Assembly: GCA_964036045.1 (NCBI GenBank) | Contig: OZ038379.1 | Span: forward strand, 5,890,001-5,954,000 | Length of the DNA stretch: 64,000 nt | Direction: 5' to 3' | Origin: Eutreptiella sp. 'Long Island Sound 2002' | Taxonomy: Eukaryota; Protista; Euglenida | In this document: one piece after another, positions 3,935 to 20,894 of the stretch | How the letters are laid out: every line of letters starts with the position of its first letter | How positions within the stretch are numbered: position 1 is the stretch's first letter | Made by a program: the position numbers and the translations under genes | The notes under the pieces: generated by a model | Told to the model about the DNA's origin: nothing | Seen by the model: only the letters and a program-made list of their open reading frames with translations | Databases searched by the model: none

Positions 3935-6187
3935 ATGAACCTTACTGCTTACACCAGATCAGTGACCCGAGCCCCAACCAGCCCTAATTTTCTTTCTGTT
4001 GTACAGACTGCCTTGCACAGCGTTGTCTTTTCATTTTCATTGCTTCATGGAATTATGTTGACTGCCAACAGCAATGAGAACTCCACGGAAGTGACCTGGG
4101 GTGCCACCAAGCTGCTCTCGTTTTGGAAGGACTTCCGGTTTTCATGTCCGTCGAAGGAGAGGGCTTTCCAGATGAGCCGGGCAAATGCGGCCAAGACCGT
4201 GTTTGTCTTCATCTGCCTGGCAGTCGCGGAGGGCTGGCAGTTTAGATTTGTTTCTAGCTCATGGTACTCATGGGTCGCTCTTTTGTCCGCGATTCCCATG
4301 TGTATTCTCCTCGTGGCGTCGCTGGTCCTGATCCGATGGTGGAATGCAGTCTCGCCCTATGCCTCACATATAATTTGCACGGTTATCATTGTGGGGGCTG
4401 TGGGCAAAATTGCGCAGTTGGTCATAGCATCGAATGATTTGCAGGCCAACGTTCGCCAAATTGCCGAGGGCATGAGCTCAGATTCGTTGGATACGACCAT
4501 AGCAGCGGTTGAACGTCACACAGCGGCAGCCATCTCTATGGTAGGCGGTCCGATCATGTCTGTTGTGGTGCAATGTTTGATGCTGCATGGCTTTCTGTAT
4601 ACGCGATGGATCCTGCTGACCAATTGTGTGCCCCCTGTGGGGGGCATTGTAGCAAGCTTCTTGGTTCCAAAGCTTTCTCCCGCTGTGTTTCCCCTTTTTG
4701 TCCCTTTGATCATGTTGTGGATCAACGTTTTGCACAGCGTTGCACAGCGAAAGCAGTTCTTGGCAGAGAGCAGACAAAGAGAGACACAAGCGTTACAAGC
4801 CGAACTGAGGCATGCACAAGCAGATGTTGAATCCGACAGCATCCTCAACCACCACCTCAAGAACATCGTGGCGGAGGTGAAAGGTTGCATTGAAACGTTC
4901 CTGGAGGATGGCACCGCAGATGAGCTCTTGCAGCGGGCCTTAGAGCGGCTGCAGAGTGGAATTAAATGGTGCAAGAATAGGCTTGTTCTGATCCGAGTGG
5001 TTTCCACTGAGTACGTCCCGCAGCTGACATCGGTGAACCTTGCAACATTTGTTGAAGGTCTGATCTCCGGCCGGCAAATGCCGCATGTCACATTCCCTGA
5101 CCAGTCCGTATGGATGGACGAGAGCCTGTGTGCATTTATGTTGGAAAATGTGATTGTCAACGCGCTTCGACATGGACATCCTGAAGGGCCTGCCGTTTCC
5201 CTGCACATTGATCTGCAGCCCAAGCCCAGCACTGCCGAACATACAATTACGTTCCGGGTGACGAATCGTGCAGATCCAGCCAAGCCTCGGATTACACCCG
5301 AGTTTTGGCGGCAAGCCTCCGAAGGCAACCATCAGGAGCTGAGGCCTGGTGGGCTATCTGATGGCCTTGGACTGAGCCACATATTCATGATTGCTGAAAG
5401 GCTTGGTACCGTAGCCTCACTAACTCAAGCAGAGGGTGACGACACAGTGGTTTTTGCGGCCTCTATGCCTGTCCGAGTCAGCGATGACCGTCGCATAAGC
5501 GTTTCAAGCACTGTTGTGCCAGAGCAGCCCGTGCCGTCCGCGATACAGCAACGGCCCTGGAACCTTCGCTTCTGCTGTGCCGATGACAGCCCACTTGCTC
5601 GGAGGCTATTGGACGTCAACCTCAAGCGTTATTTTCAGGGAAGTTGTGTGGAAATGTTCGGGGCAACCAAAGACGACTTGGAGGGCTTTGCGGAGGCCGC
5701 CATGGCACTGGCTGATGTCGTCATCCTGGATCAAAACATGGAGTACGGGCCAACAACGGTACGCGGCACGAACCTCTTGAAGCAGCTGACCGCCCTTGGC
5801 TTCGGGGGGCTTTGCTGCATCAGATCCGCCAACACTTCGGCTGACGACAGGGCGTTGTACACATCGTGCGGCGCGCACCTCACATTGGACAAGGGCCTCA
5901 GCTTCAGGGATATGGCATTGTGCCTTCAAAATGCATATGTCGAGCATGTGGCTTTTTCCGCTCCAACTACTATGTCTGCTGGCAGCAGCAGTTGCAGCGT
6001 CCGCAGCGATCGCCCCAGCAGCGCTAGCCCCTCTGGCGTGCTGAACAACGTAGGGACACCGAGGCAGGTGTGGGGACAGGGATGCAGCCGTGGCATCGCT
6101 GATGCGGTGACACCGAGGCAAGTGTGTGTGCAGGGTGGTAGGCCCGCGGACAGCGAGGCGGGTGTGTCAGCCGGCAGCTGTGGTTGA
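3935..6187 (+). CDS. Membrane-bound hybrid sensor histidine kinase / response regulator; likely true start ATG at 4055
   Basis: 750-codon open frame with about 6-7 hydrophobic segments, an H-box (SDSILNHHLKN), N-box (ENVIVNALRHG), G2 box (SDGLGLSH) and a receiver domain (ADDSPLARRLL, VILDQNM phospho-Asp, IRSAN, LDKG). Confidence 0.85.
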   Translation: MNLTAYTRSVTRAPTSPNFLSVVQTALHSVVFSFSLLHGIMLTANSNENSTEVTWGATKLLSFWKDFRFSCPSKERAFQMSRANAAKTVFVFICLAVAEGWQFRFVSSSWYSWVALLSAIPMCILLVASLVLIRWWNAVSPYASHIICTVIIVGAVGKIAQLVIASNDLQANVRQIAEGMSSDSLDTTIAAVERHTAAAISMVGGPIMSVVVQCLMLHGFLYTRWILLTNCVPPVGGIVASFLVPKLSPAVFPLFVPLIMLWINVLHSVAQRKQFLAESRQRETQALQAELRHAQADVESDSILNHHLKNIVAEVKGCIETFLEDGTADELLQRALERLQSGIKWCKNRLVLIRVVSTEYVPQLTSVNLATFVEGLISGRQMPHVTFPDQSVWMDESLCAFMLENVIVNALRHGHPEGPAVSLHIDLQPKPSTAEHTITFRVTNRADPAKPRITPEFWRQASEGNHQELRPGGLSDGLGLSHIFMIAERLGTVASLTQAEGDDTVVFAASMPVRVSDDRRISVSSTVVPEQPVPSAIQQRPWNLRFCCADDSPLARRLLDVNLKRYFQGSCVEMFGATKDDLEGFAEAAMALADVVILDQNMEYGPTTVRGTNLLKQLTALGFGGLCCIRSANTSADDRALYTSCGAHLTLDKGLSFRDMALCLQNAYVEHVAFSAPTTMSAGSSSCSVRSDRPSSASPSGVLNNVGTPRQVWGQGCSRGIADAVTPRQVCVQGGRPADSEAGVSAGSCG
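3984..4006 (+). promoter_or_regulatory. Candidate 3' splice / trans-splice acceptor upstream of the kinase ATG
   Basis: CTAAT branch-point-like motif at 3984, pyrimidine tract and TACAG ending at 4006, 48 nt before the in-frame ATG at 4055. Confidence 0.5.
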
Positions 6188-6212
6188 TCATCATCTCTCC
6201 ACGCAGTTCGTA

Positions 6213-6490
6213 GCCCCCCCCCGCCCCCCCTTGCAATCCCCTCCCCCCCTGGGGGGGAACGGTCACTTGGCCTAGAAACCTAGGAAATACTAGGTGCCAA
6301 AGTTGCCAAAAAAAATTTTACAAGGCGCCAAAGGCGCCGAAGCCGATTTACACTGTGATACTATGGTACAGATTTGTGGTGCAATTCCCCCCGTATGGGG
6401 GGGAAACGTCACATCATGACTGTTCCCCCCTCCCCTGGGGGGGAACCGGCCTGACAAAAGGGGGGAGATTGCAAGGGGGGCGGGGGGTAG
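6213..6490. mobile_element. Small palindromic MITE-like element
   Basis: Imperfect inverted arms: cccgccccccccttgcaatc (~6219) vs gattgcaaggggggcgggg (~6468), and gggggggaacggtca (~6251) vs tgactgttccccc (~6418); gtag lies at both edges. Confidence 0.4.
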
Positions 6491-6563
6491 GCACTGGTAG
6501 GTACAGAACCTTCAAACATTGCCGTTGGCCGCCAGCCCAGAGCAAGGCAGCACTGCCTGGGGC

Positions 6564-6665
6564 CAAGCATGTGCAGCCGCAGCATGCCGCAGCACCCGTT
6601 TTTTGGAGCTGCACATGGGGGTTTTGACGCATGCCGCAGCATGCTGCGGCATGCCGCAGCACCCG
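6564..6665. repeat. GCATGCCGCA-type subterminal repeats at the hAT left end
   Basis: Several gcatgccgcagc / gcatgctgcggc units; the same motif cluster recurs at 38656-38730. Confidence 0.6.
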
Positions 6666-6809
6666 TTTTTTTTGAGTTCATGTGTCTGTCTGCCTTGTCT
6701 GCTTGCTCCTGCTCTGTTTGCACGGGAGACATTCTGCCTGCCCCATGTCTCCCCAGTTTAATTTTATTTGTCTTGTCATGAGTCAGTCATCTGCACCAAC
6801 AACATGCAG

Positions 6810-8000
6810 TCAACAGTCAACACCAAGCTTAAATTTCCTGATGAGGTGAACCATGTCACGGTCAGTGATTGCTTGGATGAGGTTTGCCGTAGTTTTCACA
6901 TCGACCCTGCTGATGTGCGTTAGTTTGTACATGACTCACCGCCCTATATGTCTGCAGCAGCTGAGTGCTTCATCAAAGACAAGGGGTATATCAATTGTGT
7001 TCACCTCCCCTGCTGGCCGCACTTGTTTGCAAAGGTGCCTGAGGCTGTCTTTGACGCCAGTGTACTGAATTCCACAGGCTTGTCCAATTGTTGTTTGCAC
7101 GGTCACCATTTTGGCGCACCAAATGGTATCGTTATCAGAAGGCAGCTTTTAAAAAATGGAAGGACGTTCATGAGCAGTTGTCTGATGAACTGAAGCAACG
7201 ACACGAAAAAGAGAGGCCAGCCCCTGTTAAGAGTGTTGTGCGCCCAACGGACGCCAGGTGGGCCTCCCAATTTGATGCATATAAATATTGGCGGGGGCGC
7301 ATTTCAGCTTTTAAAAAGTTTCCGAGTGAAGTTCCTAGTGACTGATGCAGTTCGTTAAACAGCACTCAAGGTGCAGATTGCATTCACCTGCGAATCCATG
7401 CAGCCAATATATGACCTAATTCTGAGTTTTCAAAAGCAGACAGGTGGCCCAGCCGATCCTTTGGGTGCACTAAATGACATTAAGAGCGCACAGGCTGAGG
7501 TCATTCGTGGCAAATTTCCCCCTGGCGTACAGAAATTGCTCAGTGCATGTCCAGCTCCACAGGCTGCTGCTCAGAGCAAGGTTTTGCAACAGGCAGCCAC
7601 AGTGATGTCCAGCAAGGTGGATAATCTGCATGCAAAGACTATCAAAGGGCGAGGCAAGACTCAGGCGGCATTTAATTGTTTCAACCCAGAACTGCTGCCG
7701 ACCAAAGAAGTGATGTCTTATTCTGAGTTGTGTAAACACATACCCAATGTGCCACAATCTGAGTGGGTGCGGTATATTGCTCTGCCAGCCCCGAGCCCTC
7801 TGCCGGATTCTACTGCAGCCAGAGTGGCATGGTGGCATGCCAAAAAAGACGATTTTCCTACATTGAGTAGCATTGCTGTTTTCTTTGTCCGATGACCATG
7901 TTGAGCGAACGTTCAGTTTGGTGGGCCACATCCAGACAAAGGACCGTTTGCATATGGGCCACAACACTTTGCGCCATTTGGCTATGATGTATGTCAACAA
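6810..8000 (+). pseudogene. Degenerate, N-terminally deleted hAT-superfamily transposase
   Basis: FVHDSPPYMSAAA (catalytic-D region, 6924), CxxH motif HLPCWPHL (~7000), and the C-terminal dimerisation domain WWHAKKDDFPTLSSIA...HVERTFSLVGHIQTKDRLHMGHNTLRHLAMMYVN; split by stops and frameshifts. Confidence 0.8.
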
Positions 8001-8095
8001 ACCCACTACAGACGATCCCAGGTTTCCCCAGAAACCCCAGTTTGGCATCACTGCCTCTCTTATCCATAGTGTGCAGTATATTTTTTTTTGCTGCC

Positions 8096-8353
8096 ATGAT
8101 CGTCCTCAAGTTCAGCGGCACGTCGGTCGGGAACCCCACGAGCGTCCAACAGGTGATCACGCTGATCAAGCGCAGCGATGCTGCGGAGATGGCCAAGGCC
8201 AATGGGCGCCATATCGCCGTCATCTTCTCGGCGCTTGCGGGCGTCACCAACCATCTCCTGAAACTGGGGCAGACGGCCGAGGATGGCGGGGACTGGGAGC
8301 AGGAGTTCGCGGCTCTGACCCAGCGCCGCCTCGACGCCATCACGGAGCTGGTG
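8096..8353 (+). pseudogene. Aspartate kinase N-terminal fragment (captured)
   Basis: MIVLKFSGTSVG...VIFSALAGVTNHLL matches the aspartokinase KFGGTSV and SA-x-x-x-x-TN-x-L motifs; only about 86 codons present. Confidence 0.8.
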
Positions 8354-8379
8354 GCAGCACCGCAGCAGCCCCGCGTGTG

Positions 8380-8673
8380 CGCCCACGTCACGGACATGCT
8401 GCACGTCAAGACCGCTGTCAACCCCGTCGACATCAACGTGATGGCCGGTGCACTGGTGGACGCCGGATGGGCCATGCCGCTCCCGTTCTCCTTGGGCTAC
8501 GACTCTTCCGGCGTGGTCGACAACTTCCATGCGGACGATGTTGCGGGCGCGTTCAAGGCTGGCAACGCGGTCTCTGCCGTGAACTAGGAGCAGCACAAGC
8601 ACGACGAAAAGGGGCTGCCCACCGGCGGTGCCTTTGCGCAGTACATCACGATCCCGGTCGCGTCCGTGGTGCA
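8380..8673 (+). pseudogene. MDR-family (quinone oxidoreductase / Zn-ADH-like) N-terminal GroES-fold fragment
   Basis: AVNPVD...PLPFSLGYDSSGVV...FKAGNAV...GGAFAQYITIP; same frame as the aspartokinase piece, with one TAG at 8585. Confidence 0.75.
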
Positions 8674-8719
8674 CACCGACATCGCTGCGCGGGAGAAGCA
8701 GACGACTGCCCTGGCCGCG

Positions 8720-9130
8720 GACACACTTGCGACCAACTTGAAGTACAACGGCTTGGGCAGTAGCAGTGCACGGGCGCTCATGGCGCTGAGGGGTGCCCTA
8801 TCGCTGCGCGCCCTCTCGCCCGACCTCGGCGGGCACGGCGTTGGCAATGACGGCATCCACGCGATCGCGGATCTGCAGGGCGCGGCAGGGCTGTACATGT
8901 TGATCATCATCCTGGTGGAAAACAAGCTGACCGGCATCGCCGTGCGAACCATCGCAGCGCTGTAGGAGAGGCCCGCGCTGCGCAACATGGCCATCTACAC
9001 CCGGGGCAACAACGACAACGAGGCCGCGTGGCACACCCTCGTGGCGCTGACGGAGCCCCCCTCGCTGCACACCCTGATCCTCGATCCCGAGTCCCCGCGC
9101 CTCAACGACCAGGGCCTGTGCGCGTTGCTG
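8720..9130 (+). pseudogene. RNI-like leucine-rich-repeat fragment
   Basis: Repeated units NLKYNGLGSSSARAL, DLGGHGVGNDGIHAI, ILVENKLTGIAVRTI, PSLHTLILD; same frame, TAG at 8963. Confidence 0.6.
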
Positions 9131-9480
9131 TGGGAGGCACTGCTGTGCCACGTCGGCGTGAAAGAGCAGGTGCCGTTGGGGTCGGAGCGACGCCCCGACG
9201 GAGGAGGATTAGACACCGACGGTGCCGCAAGCGCACCAGCCAGGGATCCGATGGGGACTGCACGAGATTCGCCCCGGCCACTCCTGAAACTGCGGCTCCG
9301 TGGGCGACTCAGCAGCGGCCGCTTAACCCCCGGCGCACACAGCTTCGCCGCCTCCGCAGCCTTCGCAAGCGCCCCCACTTCGGCCACCTTTGCCAGCACC
9401 ACTACCGCAAGTCCAGTCGCCCACACCGATGCTGCCCCCGCTGCCCCAACCGGCCCCAACTCCGACCGAGTGCAAGGCGC

Positions 9481-9708
9481 TTTCCAGTGTACGTGCGCGG
9501 CCTGGACACGATGTTCGTGCTGCACCTGCTCCCCCATGAACGCGTCCGGAATGTGAAGAACATGGTTCAGCGCAAACTCAAAGTCCCCTGGAGGCACCAG
9601 CGCCTGCTGCACGGCAACACGCCACTTGCCGACAACCACGCCATCGCCGCCTACGACGTGCAGCGGAACAGCACAATTACCCGCGCGCTCTATCTGCGCG
9701 TTGGAGGC
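9481..9708 (+). pseudogene. Ubiquitin-like domain 1 (76 codons, ends LRVGG)
   Basis: FPVYVRGLD...VRNVKNMVQRKLKVPWRHQRLLHGNTPLADNHAIAAYDVQRNSTITRALYLRVGG is colinear with ubiquitin. Confidence 0.8.
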
Positions 9709-10272
9709 CCCGGCGACGGCACCACAGGGGTCCGTGCCAGCTGCTGCTGGGCACTGGACCTGGAGGCCGGGACACTCTGCCCAGCAGTGCTGTCCCACCG
9801 CGCACAGACCTCGGCACCGGCAGCGCGCTGGACAGCCCGCTGCAACACCAGCGCCCACGATAACATCTGCGACATCCACGAGCTGCAGGCGGCCCTACCG
9901 CAGCCCAGCAAGTGCACCCAGACTGCGGAGTCACTGCAAAGCACGATGCGAGCCCGGATACTCCAGTCGAAGGCCGACGTACGGGCGCGACACCGGGGGA
10001 AACCCCCAACACCGGGAGCGGCCCAACCAACGCCACCGGTGGAGCTGGAGACCGCGCACGCGCCGGCAGCAAATGCCGTGATGCGCACTGTGCTGAAGGG
10101 TCTGGCACTGGGGGCCCCGCGACTGCTGGTGGACGTGGCGGTCATGGGTGACACACCGGCCAACATCGGGCACCACAACCACGACGTCGGCCATGCAGTG
10201 ACCACGACGACGCGCGGCACCGGGACAGGGGCAAACGGCGCGGCCACCCATGGTACAGGCCGCACGCGTACA

Positions 10273-10506
10273 CACCAGTTCTTCGTGCGAGCGGACGCGG
10301 GGCACATCATCACCATCTGTGTCCAAACCTGGGACGCCCTTGTACGCGACATCCAGGTGCACGTCCACAACAAACTGCGCGCCCGGGCCCAGCGGCACAG
10401 GCTGGTGTTGGCGGGCAAGCAGCCGACCCGCGGTGAATGCACCGTGGCTGAATATGGTATCGGGGAGGGGTCAACCCTCGACTTCCTTGGCCGCCTTTGT
10501 GGCCGA
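10273..10506 (+). pseudogene. Ubiquitin-like domain 2, directly fused to Gag
   Basis: HQFFVRADAGHIITI...RLVLAGKQ...TVAEYGIGEGSTLDFLGRLCGR followed immediately by ATG at 10507. Confidence 0.8.
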
Positions 10507-11862
10507 ATGCCGGCAAAAGGCGACGTAACGAACGGGGACGCCACCATGACGCCTGCGGAGGGCGGCCCCAGCGTTGCCGCAGCATCTAACTCCTCCCTCC
10601 TCGCATGGGCAAAATGGGTGCGCGGCCCATACCAGGCCCCACTCAATAGTGCCCATTTTGAGCAGCAACTCCACAAGTGGGAGCTCGCCAGCCTGGAGGC
10701 CCTCACAAAGCAAGAGGTGCCAGAAGGGGCGGTGGCAGCCATGACGACGCGGGCAGGCCTAGCCCTAACCACGGAAGAGGCCACGCATGCCATGGCGGCG
10801 TACAAGGGGCGACGCCACCTACAGCCCGACTTCATTGCCGGAGTCTTCCACCGCGTGCCTAGCAGAATCACTGATGAGAGCGCAATAGCCCAGGGCCAGG
10901 GGGCAGTGCCCACACAACCGCACCCGACGGTACTGAAATGAGCACGCTGGGTCGCAGGCCCGTACGCTGCCATTGCGGGTCACAACACCTATGCGCACGA
11001 CTTGGACAGACGGGAGGTCGACTTCGAGGAGTACGTGATGGAGGTCGAGGCCACGACAGAGCAGCTCGGCGCATTGGTGGCGGCAGCGGGCCTGGACCTC
11101 AATCGGACGGCGGCAGTACGGGCCTTGGGCGCCTACGCTGCCCGCAAATCCCTCCGACCGGACCTACATGAGCTCCGCTTCACAGGTGTCCCGGCCGCAG
11201 ACGGAGCGGGCGCCACGACGGGTGACAACGCCACAGGCCAAGGCCGGATGCGTGAAACTGTGGCACTGCTCTCGGCCCAGAAGCGGGAGGTAGAGCAGAT
11301 GCGCCAGTCCCTCATCCCACCACTCACCCAGGTAGCGGTAGACCGCTTCCTCACGGAGGCCCTGCCATATGCTTGGATGACCTCCTTGGCGGCCTGCCTG
11401 AAAGAACTCTCCCTCGAGGACCCCACTGGTGCTTGGGCCAAGCAGCCACTTCCGTCCACTGTGTGGCGCGTCCTCAATGAGGGACTCCGCGCCAAGAGGC
11501 AGGGCCGTCCATCAGCCCCAGCGCTGACAAACCAACCCGGGCTGCCAGGGCAGATGGCACCATTGCAGCACCAGGTGATGGCGACTGGATCGGGCACCGT
11601 GTGCTTCAACTGCGGCAGTCGAGGGCACATCGCGCGCATGTGCCCACGGAAGGCTCTTGGGGGCCAAGTTCAGCAAATGGGACTCCACACCTTGTGGGTG
11701 CATCACAACCAAGCCTACGATATGAACGCACCACTGCCAGCCCCATGCAAACGATGCGGGCAGATGCATTGGGCACGGTTCCCGTGCCCCCAACCTCAGT
11801 CGGGGACGATCACCAACCCCACCACACACCAGCCCAGCAACCGCAAGCGCACAGGGGGCTGA
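10507..11862 (+). pseudogene. Gag-like ORF with CCHC zinc knuckle
   Basis: One frame with a single TGA (10939) at a position where the paralogous motif has Trp; knuckle CFNCGSRGHIARMC and a second CKRCGQMHWARFPC. Confidence 0.7.
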
Positions 11863-13021
11863 CTGGAGTGCGACCTTGCTGCAACTCCTCCAGCAGCAGC
11901 ACGGGGGGCAGCCACCGTCAGCTTGAACCGCCGTCCCCCCGCCCCCCCAACCCCCCACCCCGCACCACCAAGCCCCAGTGGCTGGCCAAGGAACAGCCAC
12001 CGTGGCAGACGCATGGGGCGCGTACCGCGAGGCGCTCAAAGCAGGCATCCGCGATAGCCTCGCAGACACCCTGGCGTGCGCCGCAAGAGCCTTCGCCAAG
12101 GGCACAAGGGACACATACCTCTGCGCTGTGCGCAACACCCTCATGGGCAACGCCGACGACACCGATCTGCAGTTGGCCATCGATAGCCGCCTCTTGCTCC
12201 TTGGGCACCGCAAGCGCGGCGGATCAGTGGCACGCAACACCGTCTCCGGATTCCAGATGCTGGCCAAACTGCAACTCCTCCCAGAGGTGGTTACCGCGCG
12301 AATGTGGCTACAAGTGCGAGCAATCGACAAAGGCACGGCGCACCTGGCCAAACCCCGAATCTGGGCGACAGGGCAAGACCTTGAGCGGCTAGGAAAGTGC
12401 AGGCACCACTGGGCCTGGGCCAGGACATTCTTCGCCGTGGCCTGTGCCGGTGTGTTTGCCCTTCGGGTTGGCGACGTTGGCAGCTTCACCTGGGACGGCA
12501 TCAGCACCCCAGGGTTCCTCACTTTCTGGGATCAAAAGGTCAATGCCGGGTGGGTTACCTTGCCCCTCAGCCCGTTCTTGGACCGCTGGAGGGGCTACAT
12601 CTACCGATTCCGCCGACCATACCAACTGCCGACCACCCCCATCCTCCTCGCATCCCGGTGCCTCCACGACATTCTGGAGGGCACACCCAGCGCCCACATC
12701 ACCTGGCACCCGTGGAAACGATTTGCTGCCGCGGCGTACATCTGGCTTGGGGGAAACACAGTCGGCCTCCAGCAATGGGCCTGATGGAGATCCCCCAGGC
12801 AGGCCTGCCACTACGCACGCCACCCCCCGACGTGGACACTTCCAGAAACAATGTGCTTACCCCTCCCTGCAAGGTTCACAGGCTCGCCGGCACGGGACCT
12901 TGACTACGGCATTATCTGCGCGCGGGACGTATGGCCACGAGAGGCGTGGGCGCCTACCGCAGCGCGAGCACCGCGACGGACGCCCCCGCCAGCACACGTT
13001 GTCGGCAACGCACACCTCTAA
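11860..13021 (+). pseudogene. Tyrosine recombinase of a DIRS-order retrotransposon
   Basis: AFAKGTRDTY N-terminal motif, LRVGD (catalytic R), DQKV (K), WHPWKR (HxxR-like), and QQWA*WRSPRQACHY (W and catalytic Y); TGA at 12782 is plausibly CGA>TGA. Confidence 0.8.
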
Positions 13022-14379
13022 AACGACGACTCATCCTGCTCAGGGGAGGAGTCGGTCGGTCACAGTATCCAGCGCCATCCGAGCCCTCCGCCGCAACCCC
13101 AAGCAGATGACCAGCCTGAAGATGCAGCGACTACGTGCCGAGAAATGGGGCACACGGACGACGACCGCACTGAGCTGCGTGGTACGGCAGATCACGCGCC
13201 ACCTGCCCACGCACGGCGTGACAGTGACGACATGCAATCAGCCAAAGACGGTCCCACAACCAATGACGGGGACCAAGCAGTCACCCAGACAACATTGGTC
13301 GATGCTGGCACCAGCCCTTATATCACTAGCGACGCTCCCAGAACCACAAACAACAGCACGATGGTCAGCCACGACGTTGCCACAGGCACTGACCACAGTG
13401 CACGAAGTCCAGATGCGCACCTGGCACCACCACCGCACCATGCAGCCCCCCCCCCCCCCCCCCAGGATCTCAGCCAGACGTCGACCGCCGCCTTTTCTGG
13501 ACCCCGCGGCCTGAATCACCGCCCCCGAGACCCTACCGCACGAGTTCATCGCCTGGACAAACCACGCCGGGCGCACCTGGACCTGTGCGGACTCCGGACG
13601 TTGACGACATGCCCATCGACGAAGCGGAAACGGGGACGCAAGCGGAAGACACGTCGAGCTCCAGCAGCCCAGCCCCAGACCCCGTCCCAGCCTGCACCCA
13701 TCAAACCCCTCACGCAACTCGCCCACAAAGCAAGCTCGACCAGATGGCCGGAGCACACGCTACCGACGGCGAACCCGCAGGCCCCACCGCCACAGCCATC
13801 GCGCTCCAGCCACAGCCGCCAGCGACCGAACGCCGCCACAAACGGCAGCACGTGCCCACGGCAGAGACCCCAGTGCCACACCGAAAAATACGACCGGCAT
13901 GTCCGCAGCTTACTCACACAGCCGAGGCCGCAGGGCCCAATGCACAGCCCGATAACGCTCCAGCACGGCCAGACCACGCCCCATTTTGGGGGTATGACCT
14001 CCTCGCGCCTCGGAAAGGGACAAGGTTCCTCCAGTGGCACCCAGGACCCATGCCACTGTCACCGGTGGACCGCACCGGATCAGCAGGGCGCTTTGACGGC
14101 ACTGCAGGACACCCTGAGCAAGGCGGCCCATCGCATGTCCATGAAGGGACCGAGAGTGAGCACCATCCTTCCGTTGCTGCAGGACATGGCCATGCTCACC
14201 ATGAATTGGGCGTGGGACACAAACACATGGTTGGGGAGTACTGACCACCTGTGCGCTATCATGGCAGTGCTCGCTGATCGCGACCCTCGGGAAGACGACA
14301 TCTCGCCCATTAGTGACACTAGCCCCCGCCCCAAGCAGCAACCCGGTGAGACCCTGCCCCTGCATGTGGCCAGCAAGGG

Positions 14380-15858
14380 GATAGGGGCGGCGGGCTCCAT
14401 ACCGATCAACCCCGAGGTGTGGAACAAGCACCTCCCGTGCGACATGAAGCGGGCACTCCTAGTGGCGCCCGACTTGGGGGACTCCGACGACAAGGCCCTG
14501 GCTGTATGGGCACACGCCATGCACAGGGACGGACTGCTGATCCGTTGCCACCACGGCACGGCTGCCAACATGCGCGCCTTTCCCAAGCCTAAGTCGCAAG
14601 AAAAGGGGGCACTGATCGCCGACCTCCGCCTCCTCAATGCGCTCATGGGGAAACCACCACGGCCGTTCGAGCTCCCCAGCATGGCGCAACTGGCTGCCCT
14701 CCTTGAACTCTTGAAGGCACACAACGTCAAGGCATTCTTTACCAAACTTGACGTCTCCAACATGTTTTGGTCCGTATTACTCCCGCCTGAGCACTCTACC
14801 AGCTTCCGCTTCCGGGTGCAGGGGGTCACATACGCCATCCCCAGCCTACCTTTTGGTTGGACGGCCAGTCCCAGCATGGCGGTGGAAGTGCTGGCGGCCT
14901 ACCTCACCCTTCACTTTCCTGGGGAAGTGATCCTCATCCAGCATGTTGACGATGTCTTGCTGTTCTCTGCTGACCGGGAACGCCTCCGGCTGGAAACGAG
15001 CCTGCTCACAGATGAACTCCGCGCTGCAGGTTGGATCATCAGTGCCAAGTCCCAAGTAGAGCCGACCGCCCATATTACATGGATGGGTAAACACCTGGAT
15101 GGAAGCTAGTACTCCTTGAAGCAGTCCGCAGAGTACATGGCCACGGCCACGGCCATGTGGGTGAAGCTGGCCACTAAGGGCTATGACCAAACGCACTATG
15201 CGCCGCCTCTGCGGAAAGCTGATTTGGGCCCCCCGGCCTGGGCGCGGTGCTATGCCGTTCCTTAGTGGGGCGCTTGCATGGCTAAACTGGGGCCCCAAGC
15301 AGTCCAAGTACACCCCGCCGGCAGTGCTACGTGGGCTTATGGAGGCGCTTGCCCTTGGTATCACTCCGTGGAAAGCACCGCCAAATCTGAGCCCGACAGA
15401 GGAGACTTGGTACGTAGACGCAGCATATGACGACTCCCGTTGGACTGCTGCTCTATGGACCCCGGGCCGCGGCATGCGCATCTCGAGGCTACCGACATGG
15501 GTGGCCACCCAACAGGGGGCTAAGCTCGCTGCAATTGAAATGGCCACCAAGACGGCGGCCTACGAGGGGCTGACGCAGCTCCACCTGGTCGCCGACAACA
15601 TGTCAGCCATCTGGTCCACCATCAGGAACAAAAGCAGCACTGCTAGCCCGGCGCGGGCTCGGCACCTGAGGCGGATCGCACACACCCTCCGCTGGTCCCG
15701 CCTCAAGATGCGCATCAGTTGGATCGCTTCACGGTTTAATCCAGCTGACTGTCCTTCCAGGGTGTCCACTTATGATTCCTTTGTGCATATGGCGGCGGAC
15801 GCGGAGGCCACGTACCGTGCCCTGCAGCACTACCCCCTGCACGCTCCCAAACACATGG
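14380..15858 (+). pseudogene. DIRS-type reverse transcriptase and RNase H; last codons resume at 24864-24886
   Basis: RAFPKPK...LIADLRLLN, TKLDVSNMFW, SLPFGWTASP, QHVDDVLL, ITWMG; RNase H YVDAA, LVADN, SRFNPADCPSR; TAG at 15107 and a +1 shift near 15183. Confidence 0.85.
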
Positions 15859-16295
15859 TGTCTGGTGTCTGGTGTCTGAGTGCCTGGAACCGATTCCACC
15901 GGACGCACCGGATACGGCTGCCCCGGCCAGGCTGGGCTGGACGTCGCCACACCGCGGCGGGCGAAGCGTCCATCGCGTCGCTCTCGTCTCCCCCTCGGTC
16001 CCCCCCCCCCCGACCCCCAGTTCCCCGCTGCCATCGGCCGGACGCCACACGGCGCGGGCCGGAGGGGGGTGTGGGCTGTCTACCGCCTGCCCATGCACTG
16101 CACAGTGTTGGGACGCTGGCGGGCCTGGGACGCTGATCTGCAAGCACGACATGCACTGCACAGCATCCGGGCGTTCTCTGGTCGTGTCGAGTAGCGAGCC
16201 GCGGGTCCCTGCGCACGCAGGGCCGGCATCAGGCTGGAAGGGCGGTGTGACAGCGCACGCTGCAGGGACCTCTGCCCCTCTGTCGAGGTGCGTCT

Positions 16296-19200
16296 TTATA
16301 GCCTCCAGTACTCCAGCTGGGTGCCTGGCTCCCAGAGCAACACTGCATCCGGGTTTAACTGGTGGACATATAGATCCGCTGGCCACTGCGCACGCAGGGC
16401 TGGCGCCAGGGCTGGGGTCAGCAGCCATACCGGTGGTAGGTGCTGCTGCAGCGCGCGCCACAGGAAACACGTGTCGTCGGCTTCGAAGGCGACTACCACA
16501 AGGCAGCCACTGCCGGGGCCAAGGCTACGGGGCGGGGGTAGGGGCAGGGCAGACAGGGTGTCCGGCGCCAGCTCCCAACGGGGCAGCACGCGGACCACCA
16601 TCCCAAGCAGTGCTGACTGCCGGTACGTTAAAGCGCCGGGGCGTCGCTCGCACCCCGCATTAACCGCATGGCCGACAGCCGTAGCCCGCCACAGCAAATG
16701 GCTTAGCTGCATCACCGGGCGGCTTAGCACGTGCAGTAGCTCTGTGACCATCGCCTTGTCCTCATCGTCTGCTCCAAATATCTCCGCCGTCATGGACACA
16801 AGGGCGTGCCGCTCAGGAGGGGCTGCCACGCCCGGGTGTAGGGGGTCCCACAGACCCACGACGCCGTCGGGTACGGCAACCCAGTACGCTGGGTGCTGGG
16901 CGGGCCCTTGAACGTGTCGGCGAACTCCGTCCAGCCAGCACACCGCTCCCAACGCGGAGACCACGAAGCCCAGGTAGTGCCAGCAGGCAGCTCGCAAGTG
17001 CACCACCAAGTCCTCGACCACGCCGTCACAGAACGGACAGCGCAACGCGGTTAGGGCTGCTGGTGGGTGACGGCGGTCCAAGAGGCGCAGCGCGTAGACC
17101 CGTCGAAGGGCTAGGCGGGGCACTGATCCCGCCAGGAAGGCGGCCACAAAAGCGGCGTGGGCCGGTGGCGAAGGTGGGGGCTGGAGCCGCGGCAGGCTGC
17201 CGGCTTGGGCGGAGTCGCTCTGCACTGATTCGAAGGCGGAGACGTCGACGATCAGTTGCCCAGTCCAGAACGCGGCCACGCGCCCGTGCAACAGTGGCAA
17301 CCAGGGCGCCGTATATGCTCGTGCTTCATGGCGTCCGCGACAAGCGAGGTCGTGGGCCTCCCGGTTGAGCTGTGTGAGCTGAGCCTGGCTGTCAGTGTTA
17401 TGCCCAGCGCGCAGCCAGATTTCCTTCGGAGGGCACGCGCCCCAGCGTGCAATGGCCTTGCGGTATAGTACGTTGAGGACCGAGAAGGGAGTTGGGCCAC
17501 GCGTCAGGTTGAGGTGCTGCGCCCCACTCGCGTCGGAGACCATGTACACCTCCGTGGCGGTCGGTGGCGGCAAGAGCATTGCAGTTGTCTTGGCCACCCA
17601 CTCTGCGTCCGTGGCGGATGCCTGATACGCGCGCAGGCCCCACCAGGCCCGATAGAAGACGCCGAGACTCGGGTGCCAAGCTGCCAGGCCCCCACTGAGG
17701 CGGCTCCCCAAGAGGCCCCCGTCGATGGCGACGACGACGTACTCGAGGGCCGGCAGCGGGTCCAGGCTGCCGGTACTGTGGATAACCATGGGGCTGACGG
17801 AGGGGCTGGGTAGGGGGACGAAATCGAGGCCCAGAGGCAGCCATACGCGGCGCATGACGGCGCCCTCTGGCGCCCATCCTGCCACGTCGTCGACCTCCAG
17901 AAGGTAGCGGGCCGCCGACGCCGCCAATGGGTTCCGGCCCCAGGACGCCGCGTAATAGGTGCTGGCCAGCAGGAGGGCGGCTCGCGTGAACAAGTCTGGG
18001 GACTGGGGGCCACCAGCAGTCAGCGGCAAGCGGAGGAAGCGCCGGGGTGCCCAAGAAGGTAGTCCGAACACTCGCCGGTAGTGCTTGTCCACGGAGGCCT
18101 GCATGGCTGCCAGTTGGAGGCGGGGGAAATGGACTCCGCGCCATACGTAGTCGCACGCGGACAGGGCGTGCACATGAAGGGCTCGAAGTTGCAGTATGGG
18201 ATGGTGGTCGGGGCGGAGGGCGGCGGCCGAGACCGAGCGGATGAGCTGGAGGAGCTTGGAGATCTTGGCTGTCATGGGCAAGTCGTGGAGGAGGGGGATC
18301 TTCAACGGGGCCGGGGGTTGGGTGGACGAGGGCTTGTCCGAGAACGGCACGTGGGTGGAAATCGCATGGAGGCCACCGGCCGTCAGTCGCACACCGTGAA
18401 ATTGGAGCTTGGAGGGGTGGACGATGCGGCCCACTCCAGTGGAAAGAACGGAGCACGTCGCCGCGTCTGCTGTGACCGCGCGTAGGGAGTTGCCGAGGAA
18501 GTGGCGGTCGTCGACGAACATGACACGGTCACATGGCAGCGGTGGGGAGTGGAGGTCGAAGGCGTTGGGTATCGTGAGGCCACCGGGCTGGCGGGCAAAG
18601 CAGGAGTTGATCAGGCACTGGGTCGCTTGGAATCCCTCTCCTGCGAAGGAATCACCCTGGTTGCGTCCCTCGCCCGTGCGGAACGGCGGCGCCAGGCCTT
18701 CGCTGGTGACGGGGTGGATCCGCAGGTGGCTGTAGACCCGATCTGCCCACGCCCCGAAGTTCCACACGTCGGGAAGTGCCGCCATGAGCGGAGCGCAGGC
18801 ATCGCGAGGCTCCCGCAAGAAGGCATCGCTTTCATCCCAGTCGCCGTCCCAGAACTCTCCCGCGCTCTGGAAGGCGGCCACTGCGCCAGCTCGGCAGACC
18901 AGCGTTAAAAACTGGGGCAGGATGGCGGTGCGGTAGCTGAAGACATCTGGCGTGTAGGCTGCTGCTACCTCCAGGGACTCATTCAAGCGTCCGCGGCCAA
19001 TCCCAGTCCAATCACGGATGATGGCCGACTCCATGGTGACCGGGCGATAAGAGCCGTAGAGGTGTCGTGGGCCCTTGTGCTTGTAGATCCCCAGCTGCAC
19101 GGCATCGAGGACCAGGCTGTCTACTCCTACATCCGTCTGCGCCAGAACGTTATATTCTCCGATAAGGATGCCGCCCGTGCCGCGCCTTGTGGCCCGCGCA

Positions 19201-20795
19201 GGGACGTTGTCCAGGGAGGCGGATAACGAGCCTGCCCGGTCAGTGTACATCGCCAGCTCCGGCACGGTGAGAAGCGGGGCCCGCGCCCGAGCGCGGGCGT
19301 ACGCTCGGCGGTCTGCTTCATTGGACGGGTCGAACCCGGCCCGGAGTAGATGCTGCAGCACAGGGAGGGGCAGAGACAGGGCAAAATCGACGTCTCCCCA
19401 TGGCGAGGGCTGCTGGGCCAGGCTGTACAACTCTGGGTCGACGGAAATGAAGCGATCCTGGGTTTCGTAACTGGCCTGGGCGGTGATTTCCTCCAAACGT
19501 TGCTGGCGGCTGTGAAGCTGCACTTCCGGGCTGGGCCGGATGTCCCGATATGGTTCCAGACGAGCACAGGGGAGGCGCATCGAGGACCTGGTGAAGGTGT
19601 TGACCGATACAGCGCCGAGTTCGGCCTCGCGTTGTCGAGAGAGGCGTTCGTCCGCGACCGCCTGAGCTTCGTCCAAGAAGGCGGAGAGGTCATCAGCGGT
19701 CCACGGCGGGGGACACCGGCGAAGGCGGCGCAGCGTGGTGGAGAGTTGTAGGGGTCTCGGGATGTACTGTTCAGCCACCGTGTGGAGGGCACGTAGGTAG
19801 GCGGGGGCTGGAGTCGGGGCCAGGGCCAGCCAACCCCAGACGACGGAGAGGGCCGCTCGAAATTGCCGGAACTGAGCCGCTGTCGCAGAGCGCCAGCGGA
19901 ACAGTCTCCAGCTGTAGGGGTCTGTGCGACCGGCGGAGAGGGTGAAGGATACGTGAAGGCCCACATGGGAGCTCGGGGTCGGGATCACTTCGTAGACGGC
20001 ATCGAGGACGGGTCCCCTGATGAACACGTGGTCGATGGACGTTTGGCGGGGGCGGCCTGCCACGGTGGTGAAGTTGGTGGGCACTCCTGGGGGTAGCACT
20101 CGACGCCACAGGTGGAGGGCACCGCGCTGGCCCAGGGCAGAGGCCAGTGGCGTTCCCGACGCTCCTGTGGAGTTAAAATCACCGAATAGCAGTGACAGGG
20201 CCGCGCCGACGCGGCGGACACACGCATCCATCTGGCGGACCTCCTGCAGCCACTCACGGTATCGCAGGTGGGGGCGGAGGTGCAGGTTGACGGCGAGGAC
20301 GCGGCCCACAGGGAAGAGTTCATACAACACTGCCATCCAGTGGTGGCCGTCGTGGCACAATTCTCCTGGTGAGCCGCGCGAGAGCAAGGAGCGGCGCACT
20401 GCCAGGAGCAGGCCCGCTCCGCGTCCGTCGGATTCGCCGCGGTGAACTGCATACCGGCGTGGGATGAGGGCTTCTGCGCGGGCGGTGTCCCAGCACTCCT
20501 GCAGGCCCACGAAGTCAGGGTCCAGGGCTTCGAGGGTCGCCGGGAGGGCGCTGGTGTGCTGTTGGGCCCCGCCGAGGTTGTTGTTGTACAGGGTGTACGC
20601 GCCGGCGCCGGGCTGCTGCTGGGGGTCGGTCGGGTCTGTGGGGGACGCGCGGGCCCATGGTGGGGGGTTCGTCACCTCGGCTGGGGGCATTGGTACGCAG
20701 GGAAGTCCCGAGGACAGGCCAGCGAGGCCGAGGGCTCCGGGGCAGGGCTGCCCGGGAAGGTACGTGACACAGCGGTCTGCCACGTCAGCCGCCAT
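16296..20795 (-). CDS. LINE Pol: APE endonuclease - RT - RNase H - CCHC zinc finger (1499 aa)
   Basis: APE: NNNLGG, GLQEC, GDFNS, IDHVF, SSH. RT: YRPV, DESDAF, QGD, FVDD. RNase H: IDGG, AEWV, VSDA, AHDLA. Zinc finger: CPFCDGVVEDLVVHLRAAC. Confidence 0.9.
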   Translation of the reverse strand: MAADVADRCVTYLPGQPCPGALGLAGLSSGLPCVPMPPAEVTNPPPWARASPTDPTDPQQQPGAGAYTLYNNNLGGAQQHTSALPATLEALDPDFVGLQECWDTARAEALIPRRYAVHRGESDGRGAGLLLAVRRSLLSRGSPGELCHDGHHWMAVLYELFPVGRVLAVNLHLRPHLRYREWLQEVRQMDACVRRVGAALSLLFGDFNSTGASGTPLASALGQRGALHLWRRVLPPGVPTNFTTVAGRPRQTSIDHVFIRGPVLDAVYEVIPTPSSHVGLHVSFTLSAGRTDPYSWRLFRWRSATAAQFRQFRAALSVVWGWLALAPTPAPAYLRALHTVAEQYIPRPLQLSTTLRRLRRCPPPWTADDLSAFLDEAQAVADERLSRQREAELGAVSVNTFTRSSMRLPCARLEPYRDIRPSPEVQLHSRQQRLEEITAQASYETQDRFISVDPELYSLAQQPSPWGDVDFALSLPLPVLQHLLRAGFDPSNEADRRAYARARARAPLLTVPELAMYTDRAGSLSASLDNVPARATRRGTGGILIGEYNVLAQTDVGVDSLVLDAVQLGIYKHKGPRHLYGSYRPVTMESAIIRDWTGIGRGRLNESLEVAAAYTPDVFSYRTAILPQFLTLVCRAGAVAAFQSAGEFWDGDWDESDAFLREPRDACAPLMAALPDVWNFGAWADRVYSHLRIHPVTSEGLAPPFRTGEGRNQGDSFAGEGFQATQCLINSCFARQPGGLTIPNAFDLHSPPLPCDRVMFVDDRHFLGNSLRAVTADAATCSVLSTGVGRIVHPSKLQFHGVRLTAGGLHAISTHVPFSDKPSSTQPPAPLKIPLLHDLPMTAKISKLLQLIRSVSAAALRPDHHPILQLRALHVHALSACDYVWRGVHFPRLQLAAMQASVDKHYRRVFGLPSWAPRRFLRLPLTAGGPQSPDLFTRAALLLASTYYAASWGRNPLAASAARYLLEVDDVAGWAPEGAVMRRVWLPLGLDFVPLPSPSVSPMVIHSTGSLDPLPALEYVVVAIDGGLLGSRLSGGLAAWHPSLGVFYRAWWGLRAYQASATDAEWVAKTTAMLLPPPTATEVYMVSDASGAQHLNLTRGPTPFSVLNVLYRKAIARWGACPPKEIWLRAGHNTDSQAQLTQLNREAHDLACRGRHEARAYTAPWLPLLHGRVAAFWTGQLIVDVSAFESVQSDSAQAGSLPRLQPPPSPPAHAAFVAAFLAGSVPRLALRRVYALRLLDRRHPPAALTALRCPFCDGVVEDLVVHLRAACWHYLGFVVSALGAVCWLDGVRRHVQGPAQHPAYWVAVPDGVVGLWDPLHPGVAAPPERHALVSMTAEIFGADDEDKAMVTELLHVLSRPVMQLSHLLWRATAVGHAVNAGCERRPGALTYRQSALLGMVVRVLPRWELAPDTLSALPLPPPRSLGPGSGCLVVVAFEADDTCFLWRALQQHLPPVWLLTPALAPALRAQWPADLYVHQLNPDAVLLWEPGTQLEYWRL

Positions 20796-20894
20796 GATGG
20801 GGGGTGCGCGCTTGAAATGGACACAAAAAGCATGTTGGAGGAGCAGCTGGGGAACATGGGAGACGATGGCGGCAGTGTGCGGGTACGGGCGGGC

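What the first reader, a model, noticed from the sequence alone, without database searches (positions are those of the whole stretch)
9481..11862. Ubiquitin-like domains fused in frame to the Gag of a protease-less YR retrotransposon
Seen: two ubiquitin-length domains (76 and 78 codons) lie in the same frame as the CCHC Gag. The second ends RLCGR, two substitutions from RLRGG, exactly before a Met; the first ends LRVGG followed by Pro. Known: DIRS-order elements lack an aspartic protease, host deubiquitinases cut after GG, and Pro at P1' blocks that cut. Inference: the element may use host DUB cleavage to release Gag from a longer precursor. I do not know of this architecture being described for YR retroelements.
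Basis: partly seen in the sequence, partly recalled or inferred. Interest (0 to 1): 0.85.

Follow-up and report, generated by a model that had tools for sequence, protein, structure and literature searches.

The report
Ubiquitin-fused Gag in algal YR retrotransposons
A family of recombinase-bearing retrotransposons in this alga makes its capsid-like Gag protein as a fusion behind a ubiquitin domain whose cutting site (RLRGG, then Met) is conserved, so the host's own ubiquitin-trimming enzymes most likely release Gag in place of the protease the element lacks.

Summary
Window 9481-9708 and 10273-10506 encode two ubiquitin-family domains (Pfam PF00240; end-to-end matches to ubiquitin in the PDB). 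Both lie in the frame of a CCHC Gag, which is followed by YR, RT and RNase H ORFs.

The window copy is decayed. Its junction reads RLCGR|M, TGA sits at 10939-10941 where other copies have Trp, and the YR ORF has a stop.

Across the family the second domain (Ubl2) is always fused directly to Gag:
- 16 of 25 copies read end in GG|M.
- 30 genomic sites encode L[R/C]GG|MPAK, with synonymous variation; the reversed-pattern control gives 0.
- Ubl2 is under purifying selection (dN/dS 0.33; tail 0.11; Gag 0.12-0.15).
- Host-gene fragments upstream (LHC, GAPDH, kinase) differ between subfamilies. The LHC piece evolves neutrally (omega about 1) yet stays in frame.
- Ubl2 has no start Met, so translation must begin upstream.

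Three related gag-YR lineages lack ubiquitin. Ubl1 occurs only in the window's subfamily and has a poor tail.

Best reading: a host-DUB-cleaved ubiquitin cassette frees Gag. Cleavage is inferred, not shown. I found no published description. Other first-stage notes on this genome saw the same fusion elsewhere.

The parts
8017..8085 (+). A 68-nt ultra-conserved motif that marks the 5' boundary of the element. A similar copy lies 3' of RNase H in other copies.
   Evidence: It is 90-96% identical in copies whose bodies are about 70% identical. There are more than 800 candidate sites genome-wide at 96-99% identity. L031 and L032 homology starts exactly at the motif. Contigs show discrete ends and depth 100-400 times that of the element body.
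7991..9480 (+). Patchwork of host-gene fragments between the 5' motif and Ubl1. In this copy it is decayed, with stops and a frame change.
Evidence: Pfam finds AA_kinase (9e-6) and ADH_N (1e-4) fragments in 7991-8584. Other subfamilies carry LHC or LHC plus GAPDH fragments at this place, in frame.
9481..9708 (+). Ubl1: a ubiquitin-family domain specific to this subfamily. It ends LRVGG and is followed by Pro.
   Evidence: Pfam PF00240. PDB phmmer against ubiquitin gives E 1.5e-6. It is present only in the window, L042, L043, L007 and L044. It is 27-37% identical to host Ub and 17-35% identical to Ubl2.
9709..10272 (+). Linker. Its last part is a diverged copy of the leader that precedes Ubl2 in all subfamilies.
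   Evidence: tblastn finds the 'link' segment upstream of Ubl2 in L041-L043 and L008. The leader peptide resembles the peptide encoded by the 68-nt motif. It has no Pfam family.
10273..10506 (+). Ubl2: the family-wide ubiquitin domain fused to Gag. Here it ends RLCGR; most copies end RLRGG and the window's subfamily ends RLCGG.
   Evidence: Pfam PF00240. PDB phmmer covers Ub residues 2-75. Family alignment and dN/dS are 0.33 overall and 0.11 for the tail. Residue table.
10507..10938 (+). First Gag repeat, starting at Met-Pro-Ala-Lys directly after Ubl2.
   Evidence: It is 66-80% identical at protein level across copies. It shows internal similarity of about 33% to the start of the next Gag part. 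dN/dS is 0.15.
10939..10941 (+). In-frame TGA that breaks ORF1 in this copy.
   Evidence: The same position is Trp in the other copies.
10942..11862 (+). Second Gag part, with the CCHC zinc knuckle at 11602-11643.
   Evidence: zf-CCHC E 9e-7. dN/dS is 0.12.
11978..12880 (+). Tyrosine-recombinase ORF. A stop at 12782-12784 interrupts it just before the conserved ...HY motif.
   Evidence: Conserved ALRVGD...K...WHPWKR...W.S....A(R/C)HY. Atlas feature search: the 10 best named clusters are all Phage_integrase, scores 0.97-0.98. All top Foldseek hits are Cre, Xer or phage integrases, though weak. Pfam and the PDB profile search are negative.
13145..15109 (+). Reverse transcriptase ORF.
   Evidence: RVT_1 E 7e-11. 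The nearest PDB sequences are retroviral RTs.
15183..16136 (+). RNase H-like ORF. A LINE (16296 to about 24886, minus strand) interrupts the element near the ORF's end.
   Evidence: It is 75-85% identical to the same ORF in other copies. Only a weak RVT_3 hit (0.22). The LINE ORF is listed; see note s1-195427.

Best explanation
**What it is.** The window holds a dead copy of a VIPER-like tyrosine-recombinase retrotransposon. Its order is gag, YR, RT, RNase H, with no protease. ORF1 is built as a variable N-terminal extension, then a ubiquitin domain (Ubl2), then Gag.

**Proposed mechanism.**
1. Translation starts upstream of Ubl2, in a leader or in captured host-gene fragments.
2. Host deubiquitinating enzymes cut after the conserved ...RLRGG. 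These are the enzymes that process polyubiquitin and ubiquitin-ribosomal-protein precursors.
3. The cut releases Gag with its own Met-Pro-Ala-Lys N-terminus and discards whatever lies upstream.

The ubiquitin domain would thus act as a portable cleavage cassette operated by the host. It supplies the one processing step that ORF1 needs in an element without a protease. It also makes Gag insensitive to what is fused in front of it.

**Shown here:** the architecture, its conservation across the family, the selection pattern, the absence of a protease, and the absence of the domain in sister lineages.

**Inferred:** that translation starts upstream, and that a DUB cuts at GG|M.
For: 1. **Ubl2 derives from ubiquitin proper.** Pfam PF00240 gives 1.5e-10 to 4e-11 in copies with an uninterrupted ORF1. 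The PDB alignment runs end to end with ubiquitin. Identity to the host's own ubiquitin is 43-53%.
2. **The junction is precise and conserved.** 18 of 25 copies end in GG and 16 of 25 read GG|M. Genome-wide, 27 sites encode LRGG|MPAK and 3 encode LCGG|MPAK, against 0 in the reversed-pattern control. Nearly every codon shows synonymous variation.
3. **Selection.** Ubl2 dN/dS is 0.33: 0.47 for the core and 0.11 for the tail (residues 59-78). Gag is 0.12-0.15. R72, L73, R74, G75 and G76 are kept while surface residues drift.
4. **Ubl2 must be translated from upstream.** Ub Met1 is Arg or His in all 12 aligned copies.
5. **An internal control.** The captured LHC segment evolves neutrally (omega 0.91-1.0), while Ubl2 in the same copy pairs has omega 0.26. 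Yet the frame stays open through 450-600 upstream codons in two lineages (simulated P of no stop: 0.01-0.025 per lineage).
6. **Upstream content varies, Ubl2-Gag does not.** Subfamilies carry LHC twice, LHC plus GAPDH, AA-kinase plus ADH fragments with Ubl1, a short leader, or other sequence.
7. **A single acquisition, then retained.** The related gag-YR lineages L045, L052 and L053 start Gag at Met after in-frame stops and have no Ub-like sequence.
8. **No alternative processing device.** There is no protease family, no D[ST]G[AS] motif in ORF1 and no 2A motif.
Against: - There is no experimental or proteomic evidence of cleavage.
- I obtained no RNA evidence. The only runs holding the sequence behave like fragmentary DNA contigs. 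The mRNA 5' end and the start codon are therefore unknown.
- Parts of the DUB-contact surface are altered. L8 is variable, H68 is Glu, L71 is Gly, and R74 is Cys in the window's subfamily. Efficiency of cutting is uncertain.
- The AlphaFold model of Ubl2-Gag was of low confidence (pLDDT 44), so the fold rests on sequence alone.
- dN/dS comes from non-independent pairs of decayed copies, and dS is partly saturated.
- A minimal copy (L034) has the 5' motif 20 nt before Ubl2 and leaves little room for an upstream start.
Confidence: 0.65

Rival explanations
1. The ubiquitin domain stays attached and works as a functional N-terminal domain of Gag. It might, for example, dock Gag or its particles to ubiquitin receptors, the proteasome, or the sorting or nuclear-import machinery, as in UBL-domain proteins.
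For: The domain is conserved and under purifying selection. K48 and R42 are kept. Some DUB-contact residues (L8, H68, L71) are changed, which could lower cleavage.
Against: - Integral UBL domains generally do not keep a C-terminal RLRGG (established knowledge of UBL-domain proteins). Here the tail is the most constrained part (omega 0.11), and it is followed exactly by the Met at which Gag starts in Ub-less sister lineages.
- The sequences upstream of the domain are neutral junk that would remain attached to Gag.
Confidence: 0.12
2. Ubiquitin serves mainly as a cis chaperone or expression enhancer for Gag, as in the ubiquitin-ribosomal-protein fusion genes, and is cut off afterwards. Insulating Gag from upstream sequence is incidental.
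For: The junction logic (Ub-GG|partner) is the same as in eL40 and eS31 precursors, which also appear among the PDB hits. The subfamily represented by P0003 has only a 65-residue leader in front of Ubl2.
Against: - It does not explain why Ub Met1 is lost in all copies and an upstream ORF is kept open.
- It does not explain why the domain persists behind very different N-terminal extensions.
- It still requires DUB cleavage, so it is a variant of the best explanation rather than an alternative.
Confidence: 0.15
3. The ubiquitin sequences are neutral passengers. They would be fragments of the host's very abundant polyubiquitin mRNA, captured like the LHC, GAPDH and kinase fragments, and have no function.
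For: - The 5' region of these elements demonstrably captures host coding fragments.
- The host has huge polyubiquitin arrays.
- Ubl1 looks like such a passenger: it is subfamily-specific and its tail decays.
Against: - Ubl2 is present in all subfamilies, across Gag dS of about 1-2, and always abuts the Gag Met.
- Its omega is 0.33 (tail 0.11), against about 1.0 for the LHC passenger in the same copy pairs.
- The junction peptide is kept through synonymous changes at 30 sites.
Confidence: 0.06

Closest known systems
VIPER / TATE tyrosine-recombinase retrotransposons of kinetoplastids (order DIRS sensu Wicker); PMC6681497
   Same: - ORF order is gag-like (with a CCHC box in some), then YR, then RT/RNase H.
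- There is no protease or integrase.
- A short direct repeat sits at the 5' end and again in the 3' region.
- An abundant short repeat derives from the termini (SIRE in T. cruzi; the 68-nt motif here).
- The host belongs to a lineage with LHC polyproteins, probably a euglenid, which would make it a fellow euglenozoan (inference).
   Different: - No ubiquitin domain is reported for VIPER, TATE or other YR elements (0 occurrences in PMC6681497; literature searches found none).
- Here Gag has a duplicated N-terminal repeat and a variable 5' region derived from host genes.
- I did not test the RT/YR phylogenetic placement.
Natural ubiquitin-fusion genes (polyubiquitin; Ub-eL40 and Ub-eS31 precursors)
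   Same: Ubiquitin ending RLRGG is joined directly to the first residue of the partner. In those genes host DUBs release the partner (established knowledge). These precursors appear among the PDB matches of Ubl2.
   Different: In those genes ubiquitin is the N-terminus and carries Met1. Here Met1 is replaced, and the domain is internal, behind a leader or captured ORF. The partner is a transposon Gag.
Cytopathic pestivirus (BVDV) genomes with inserted host ubiquitin (own knowledge, not checked here)
   Same: A mobile genetic agent carries host-derived ubiquitin inside a polyprotein, and host ubiquitin C-terminal hydrolases create a new protein N-terminus.
   Different: Those are sporadic recombinants of an RNA virus that has its own proteases. 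Here the fusion is a fixed, long-lived feature of a whole retrotransposon family that has no protease.
2A-like ribosome-skipping peptides at the N-terminus of ORF1 in non-LTR retrotransposons (L1Tc, ingi and others); PMC3708506, PMC3894237
   Same: The proposed role is analogous: a short cis module at the front of a retrotransposon ORF separates the element's protein from whatever was translated upstream. It is also prominent in Euglenozoa.
   Different: The mechanism differs: ribosome skipping versus host protease. The motif differs too. No NPGP or D.E.NPG motif is present in ORF1 here.

Membership tests
Ubiquitin family domain (PF00240) | Sequence match to the family over its curated threshold, along the whole domain. 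| tested here: met
   The window ORF scores 43.6 bits against a cut-off of 25.4, with two stretches. L031 and L032 Ubl2 cover profile positions 1-72 of 72 at E 1.5e-10 and 4e-11. PDB alignments run end to end with ubiquitin.
Ubiquitin family domain (PF00240) | Processable C-terminus ...RLRGG followed by a residue other than Pro. | tested here: met
   Met for the family: RLRGG|M, or RLCGG|M in the window's subfamily, in 16 of 25 copies and at 30 genomic sites. Not met in the window copy itself (RLCGR|M). Not met for Ubl1 (LRVGG|P).
Ubiquitin family domain (PF00240) | Beta-grasp fold. | tested here: inconclusive
   The AlphaFold model of Ubl2-Gag has pLDDT 44. The Ubl part shows strand-strand-helix elements only at low confidence.
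Ubiquitin-fusion precursor processed by DUBs | Actual cleavage after Gly76 by a deubiquitinase. | not testable with these tools
   This needs expression or proteomics. A complex prediction with a host DUB was not possible, because no further host sequence could be fetched.
YR retrotransposons (order DIRS; VIPER/TATE-like) | Tyrosine recombinase ORF in place of a DDE integrase. | tested here: met
   - The conserved motif series R (ALRVGD), K, H-x-x-(K/R) (WHPWKR), W, Y (ARHY) is shared with the distant relatives L045, L052 and L053.
- In the Atlas feature search, the 10 best named clusters are all Phage_integrase, scores 0.97-0.98.
- The top 50 Foldseek hits are all Cre, Xer or phage integrases, but they are weak (E 6e-3 and above) and come from a low-confidence model.
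- Pfam and the PDB profile search are negative.
YR retrotransposons (order DIRS; VIPER/TATE-like) | RT and RNase H of the LTR/DIRS type. | tested here: inconclusive
   RVT_1 matches at 7e-11 to 2e-13. The nearest PDB sequences are retroviral RTs. The RNase H ORF is conserved among copies but has only a weak RVT_3 hit. No RT phylogeny with reference DIRS, Ngaro or VIPER sequences was possible.
YR retrotransposons (order DIRS; VIPER/TATE-like) | No aspartic protease and no integrase. | tested here: met
   No such Pfam family appears in any ORF of the window copy, L031, L032, L045 or L053 at E up to 1. ORF1 has no D[ST]G[AS] motif.
YR retrotransposons (order DIRS; VIPER/TATE-like) | Gene order gag-like, YR, RT/RH (as in VIPER/TATE). 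| tested here: met
   The order is the same in the window and in L031-L041. It matches the description in PMC6681497.
YR retrotransposons (order DIRS; VIPER/TATE-like) | Split direct repeats (A1 ... B1 A2 B2) or ITR/ICR termini. | tested here: inconclusive
   The 68-nt motif lies at the 5' end and, in direct orientation, about 1.2 kb 3' of RNase H (L035, L037, L038; a motif-like copy at window 25544-25598).
2A-like recoding peptides of retrotransposons | D(V/I)ExNPGP motif at the front of ORF1. | tested here: not met
   No NPGP or D.E.NPG occurs in seven ORF1 products. The resemblance to 2A is in the proposed role only.

The most novel reading that the evidence does not exclude
The ubiquitin cassette lets this retrotransposon be translated as the C-terminal passenger of any upstream ORF.

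- The element repeatedly picks up in-frame fragments of highly expressed host mRNAs (LHC polyprotein, GAPDH, kinase or ADH fragments, perhaps ubiquitin itself as Ubl1).
- It borrows their start codons, and possibly their transcription or trans-splicing context.
- Host DUBs then trim everything off, so Gag is always native.

This would be a protease-based counterpart of the 2A peptides of trypanosomatid LINEs. It would point to a general euglenozoan solution for transposons that lack their own promoters.
Probability: 0.3. Interest if true: 0.9.

Novelty: new variant of a known kind. Interest (0 to 1): 0.78.

Why it matters
YR retrotransposons (DIRS, Ngaro, VIPER) have no protease, and how their Gag-like proteins are expressed and matured is essentially unknown.

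A family-wide ubiquitin-Gag fusion under selection would be the first case I know of in which a retrotransposon hands a processing step to the host ubiquitin system as a fixed part of its design. It is directly testable with a simple cleavage assay.

It also offers a natural example of a module that tolerates in-frame capture of host exons. That links transposon biology, gene-fragment shuffling and the unusual gene-expression regime of euglenozoans. The same cassette logic is already used by biotechnologists (ubiquitin-fusion expression), and here evolution appears to have found it in a mobile element.

Tried and rejected
- **Structure prediction.** The Ubl2-Gag model (pLDDT 44) and the YR model (pLDDT 42) were both of low confidence. 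I used only the YR Foldseek ranking, and only as weak support.
- **RNA evidence.** The four runs that hold the sequence are fragmentary contigs that also cover the single-copy flank, so they behave like DNA. They give no starts, splice joints or spliced-leader evidence. No statement about expression is possible.
- **Exhaustive protein search with Ubl2-Gag.** It was swamped by polyubiquitins. It yielded only three distant Gag relatives. A Gag-only word search found only same-genome proteins. An RT search likewise gave only unnamed same-genome hits.
- **Pfam and PDB-profile searches for the YR.** Both negative.
- **Rfam on the 68-nt motif.** No credible family.
- **Fixed splice-acceptor junction.** I considered whether a fixed acceptor explains the host-fragment captures. 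The junctions with the leader differ between L031 and L036/L037, so this simple version is not supported.
- **LVDAGTS as a protease remnant.** I considered whether this motif in the window's RT ORF is a protease remnant. That stretch is not conserved in other copies, so I rejected it.
- **Fetching more sequence.** No complex prediction was therefore run.
Full report
**1. The observation**

In the window, frame 1 carries an ORF from 9028 to 10941.
- Ubl1 is 9481-9708. It ends LRVGG and is followed by Pro.
- Ubl2 is 10273-10506. It ends RLCGR and is followed by Met-Pro-Ala-Lys.
- Pfam's ubiquitin family matches with two stretches (E 2.5e-11).
- phmmer against all PDB sequences aligns each domain with ubiquitin itself over nearly its whole length.
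- A CCHC knuckle lies at 11602-11643 in the same frame.
- A TGA at 10939-10941 interrupts the frame in this copy.

Downstream follow three more ORFs:
- A recombinase-like ORF at 11978-12784. It continues in frame after a stop, through ...CHY.
- An RT ORF at 13145-15109 (RVT_1).
- An RNase H-like ORF at 15183-16136.

A LINE on the minus strand then interrupts the element.

**2. The family**

The window's genome is 2.28 Gb. It holds at least 53 matches to the Ubl-Gag stretch at 69-89% nucleotide identity.

I read 30 loci plus 14 longer ones.
- The order variable 5' region, Ubl2, Gag, YR, RT, RNase H recurs throughout.
- Ubl2 abuts Gag in the same frame in almost every copy.
- Among 25 independent copies, 18 end in Gly-Gly and 16 read GG|M. 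Most read LGRLRGG|MPAK. The window's own subfamily reads RLCGG|M.
- The window's TGA lies where the others have Trp.
- L031 and L032 carry uninterrupted ORF1s of 1071 and 1112 codons.

A degenerate DNA pattern for LRGG|MPAK finds 27 sites in the genome, and LCGG|MPAK finds 3. The reversed-pattern control finds none. The sites differ at synonymous positions in nearly every codon.

**3. Selection**

I computed Nei-Gojobori estimates on 12 copies.

| Region | dN/dS |
|---|---|
| Ubl2, whole | 0.33 |
| Ubl2 core | 0.47 |
| Ubl2 tail, last 20 residues | 0.11 |
| Two Gag parts | 0.15 and 0.12 |

Residue by residue against the host's canonical ubiquitin:
- R72, L73, R74, G75, G76, R42 and K48 are kept.
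- I44 is Val throughout.
- L8 varies, K63 is Glu, H68 is Glu and L71 is Gly.
- Met1 is Arg or His in every copy.

A domain that is under purifying selection must be translated. Since it has no start codon of its own, translation must begin upstream of it.

**4. What lies upstream**

The element's 5' boundary is a 68-nt motif at window 8017-8085.
- It is 90-99% conserved even between copies whose bodies are about 70% identical.
- It is very abundant in the genome.
- It recurs 3' of RNase H.

The content between this motif and Ubl2 differs by subfamily:
- Almost nothing (L034).
- A short leader with a Met (P0003).
- Two decayed LHC units (L031, L032; Pfam 2.6e-45).
- LHC interrupted by a GAPDH fragment (L036, L037).
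- In the window's subfamily, kinase and ADH fragments, then Ubl1, then a linker.

The LHC passenger evolves neutrally. Its omega is 0.91-1.0, while Ubl2 in the same copy pairs has omega 0.26. Even so, 450-600 upstream codons remain free of stops in two lineages. Simulation makes that unlikely under neutrality, with P about 0.01-0.025 per lineage. Selection therefore seems to act on the reading frame of the extension but not on its sequence. That is what one expects if the extension is translated and then thrown away.

**5. Ubl1**

- It occurs only in the window, L042, L043, L007 and L044.
- It is 27-37% identical to host ubiquitin and only 17-35% identical to Ubl2.
- Its end is GG-Pro in three copies and GR/GQ-Thr in two.
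- It looks like one more captured or old duplicated piece, not a general feature. I did not test whether it is selected.

**6. Relatives without ubiquitin**

Three more distant gag-YR(-RT-RH) elements are L045, L052 and L053, from two ENA assemblies.
- Their Gag is 31-42% identical.
- Gag starts at a Met shortly after in-frame stops.
- They contain nothing similar to ubiquitin.
- L052 and L053 also have a single copy of the Gag repeat that is duplicated in the window's family.

The ubiquitin fusion is therefore a derived character of one clade. It was acquired at the Gag initiator and then kept through a long diversification; Gag dS between subfamilies is 1-2.

**7. Identity of the element**

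*No protease or integrase.* No such family is found in any ORF.

*Recombinase.* The ORF is negative in Pfam and in a PDB profile search. Three other lines support it:
- It keeps an R...K...HxxK/R...W...Y motif series across distant relatives.
- Its language-model features sit among Phage_integrase clusters.
- A low-confidence model retrieves only Cre, Xer and phage integrases.

*VIPER/TATE match.* Three features match VIPER/TATE of kinetoplastids as described in PMC6681497:
- The gene order.
- The CCHC box.
- The short terminal direct repeat with an abundant derivative.

That paper does not mention ubiquitin.

*Host.* Its LHC polyprotein genes and an earlier follow-up note calling it an alga suggest a euglenid (inference).

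**8. Mechanism and rivals**

The most economical reading is a ubiquitin cassette cleaved by host DUBs, which frees Gag. The following remain unproven:
- The cleavage itself.
- The start codon.
- Expression of the element.

The rivals are:
- An uncleaved UBL domain.
- A pure chaperone role.
- A neutral passenger.

They are weighed in their own sections of this report. The neutral-passenger reading is largely excluded for Ubl2 but is plausible for Ubl1.

**9. Novelty**

- Full-text searches for ubiquitin together with DIRS, YR, Gag, ORF1 or retrotransposon found no description of such a fusion.
- A 2026 preprint on Euglena DIRS and LTR elements does not mention it.
- The closest functional analogue is the 2A peptide at the front of trypanosomatid and metazoan LINE ORFs (PMC3708506, PMC3894237).
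- Five other first-stage notes of this scan recorded the same Ub-Gag junction elsewhere in this genome. They are unchecked and are not independent evidence, but they are consistent with my own genome-wide count.

**10. Limits**

All statements rest on individual natural copies.
- The align_proteins tool prints a majority line by itself, and I did not use it.
As a result, 3' termini and host DUB genes could not be read.

Noticed in passing
window 8017-8085; L031:2525-2592; L034:4046-4110: A 68-nt motif is 90-99% conserved, with more than 800 candidate sites genome-wide and also in tandem arrays. It forms the 5' end of these elements and recurs 3' of RNase H. It contains a pyrimidine tract followed by AG and a T-run, and it recalls SIRE of T. 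cruzi VIPER. A diverged copy of the peptide it encodes (PGFPRN..LPLL) lies just before Ubl2.
   Followed up: partly
window 25455-28000 (and probably further): A tandem repeat of period 1115 bp lies after the LINE. It is homologous to the region 3' of RNase H in L008, L035 and L038. Each unit contains an 80%-identical copy of the 68-nt motif.
   Followed up: partly
L036/L037 (G000:C21:12427500-12437499, C8:25893000-25902999), upstream of Ubl2: A GAPDH N-domain fragment (Gp_dh_N, 6.9e-6) is inserted in frame inside a captured LHC unit. The 5' extensions are mosaics of several host mRNAs.
   Followed up: partly
L031 versus L034, L036 and L037: Ubl2 and the leader differ by dS 0.2-0.3, while Gag in the same copies differs by dS of about 2. 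The 5' module seems to have been exchanged between subfamilies by recombination.
   Followed up: no
window 10507-10938 versus 10942-11250: The N-terminal Gag domain (W..W..GPY ... Y..R..L.PDF) is tandemly duplicated at about 33% identity in this family. It is single in the Ub-less relatives L052 and L053.
   Followed up: partly
G000:C15:29319000-29380000: The host has very large polyubiquitin arrays, with open frames up to 1701 codons (about 22 units) and many arrays in 60 kb. It also has LHC polyprotein genes with open frames up to 4424 codons elsewhere (for example C9:43682018).
   Followed up: no
L044 (G000:C10:35264000-35273999), 5461-6789: In the window's closest relative (89% identical), the upstream block of host fragments, Ubl1 and linker lies inverted relative to Ubl2-Gag, with an RT fragment in between. 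This is a rearranged copy.
   Followed up: no
window 16296-24886 (minus strand): A full-length LINE with an endonuclease-RT ORF of 1499 codons is inserted near the end of the RNase H ORF.
   Followed up: no
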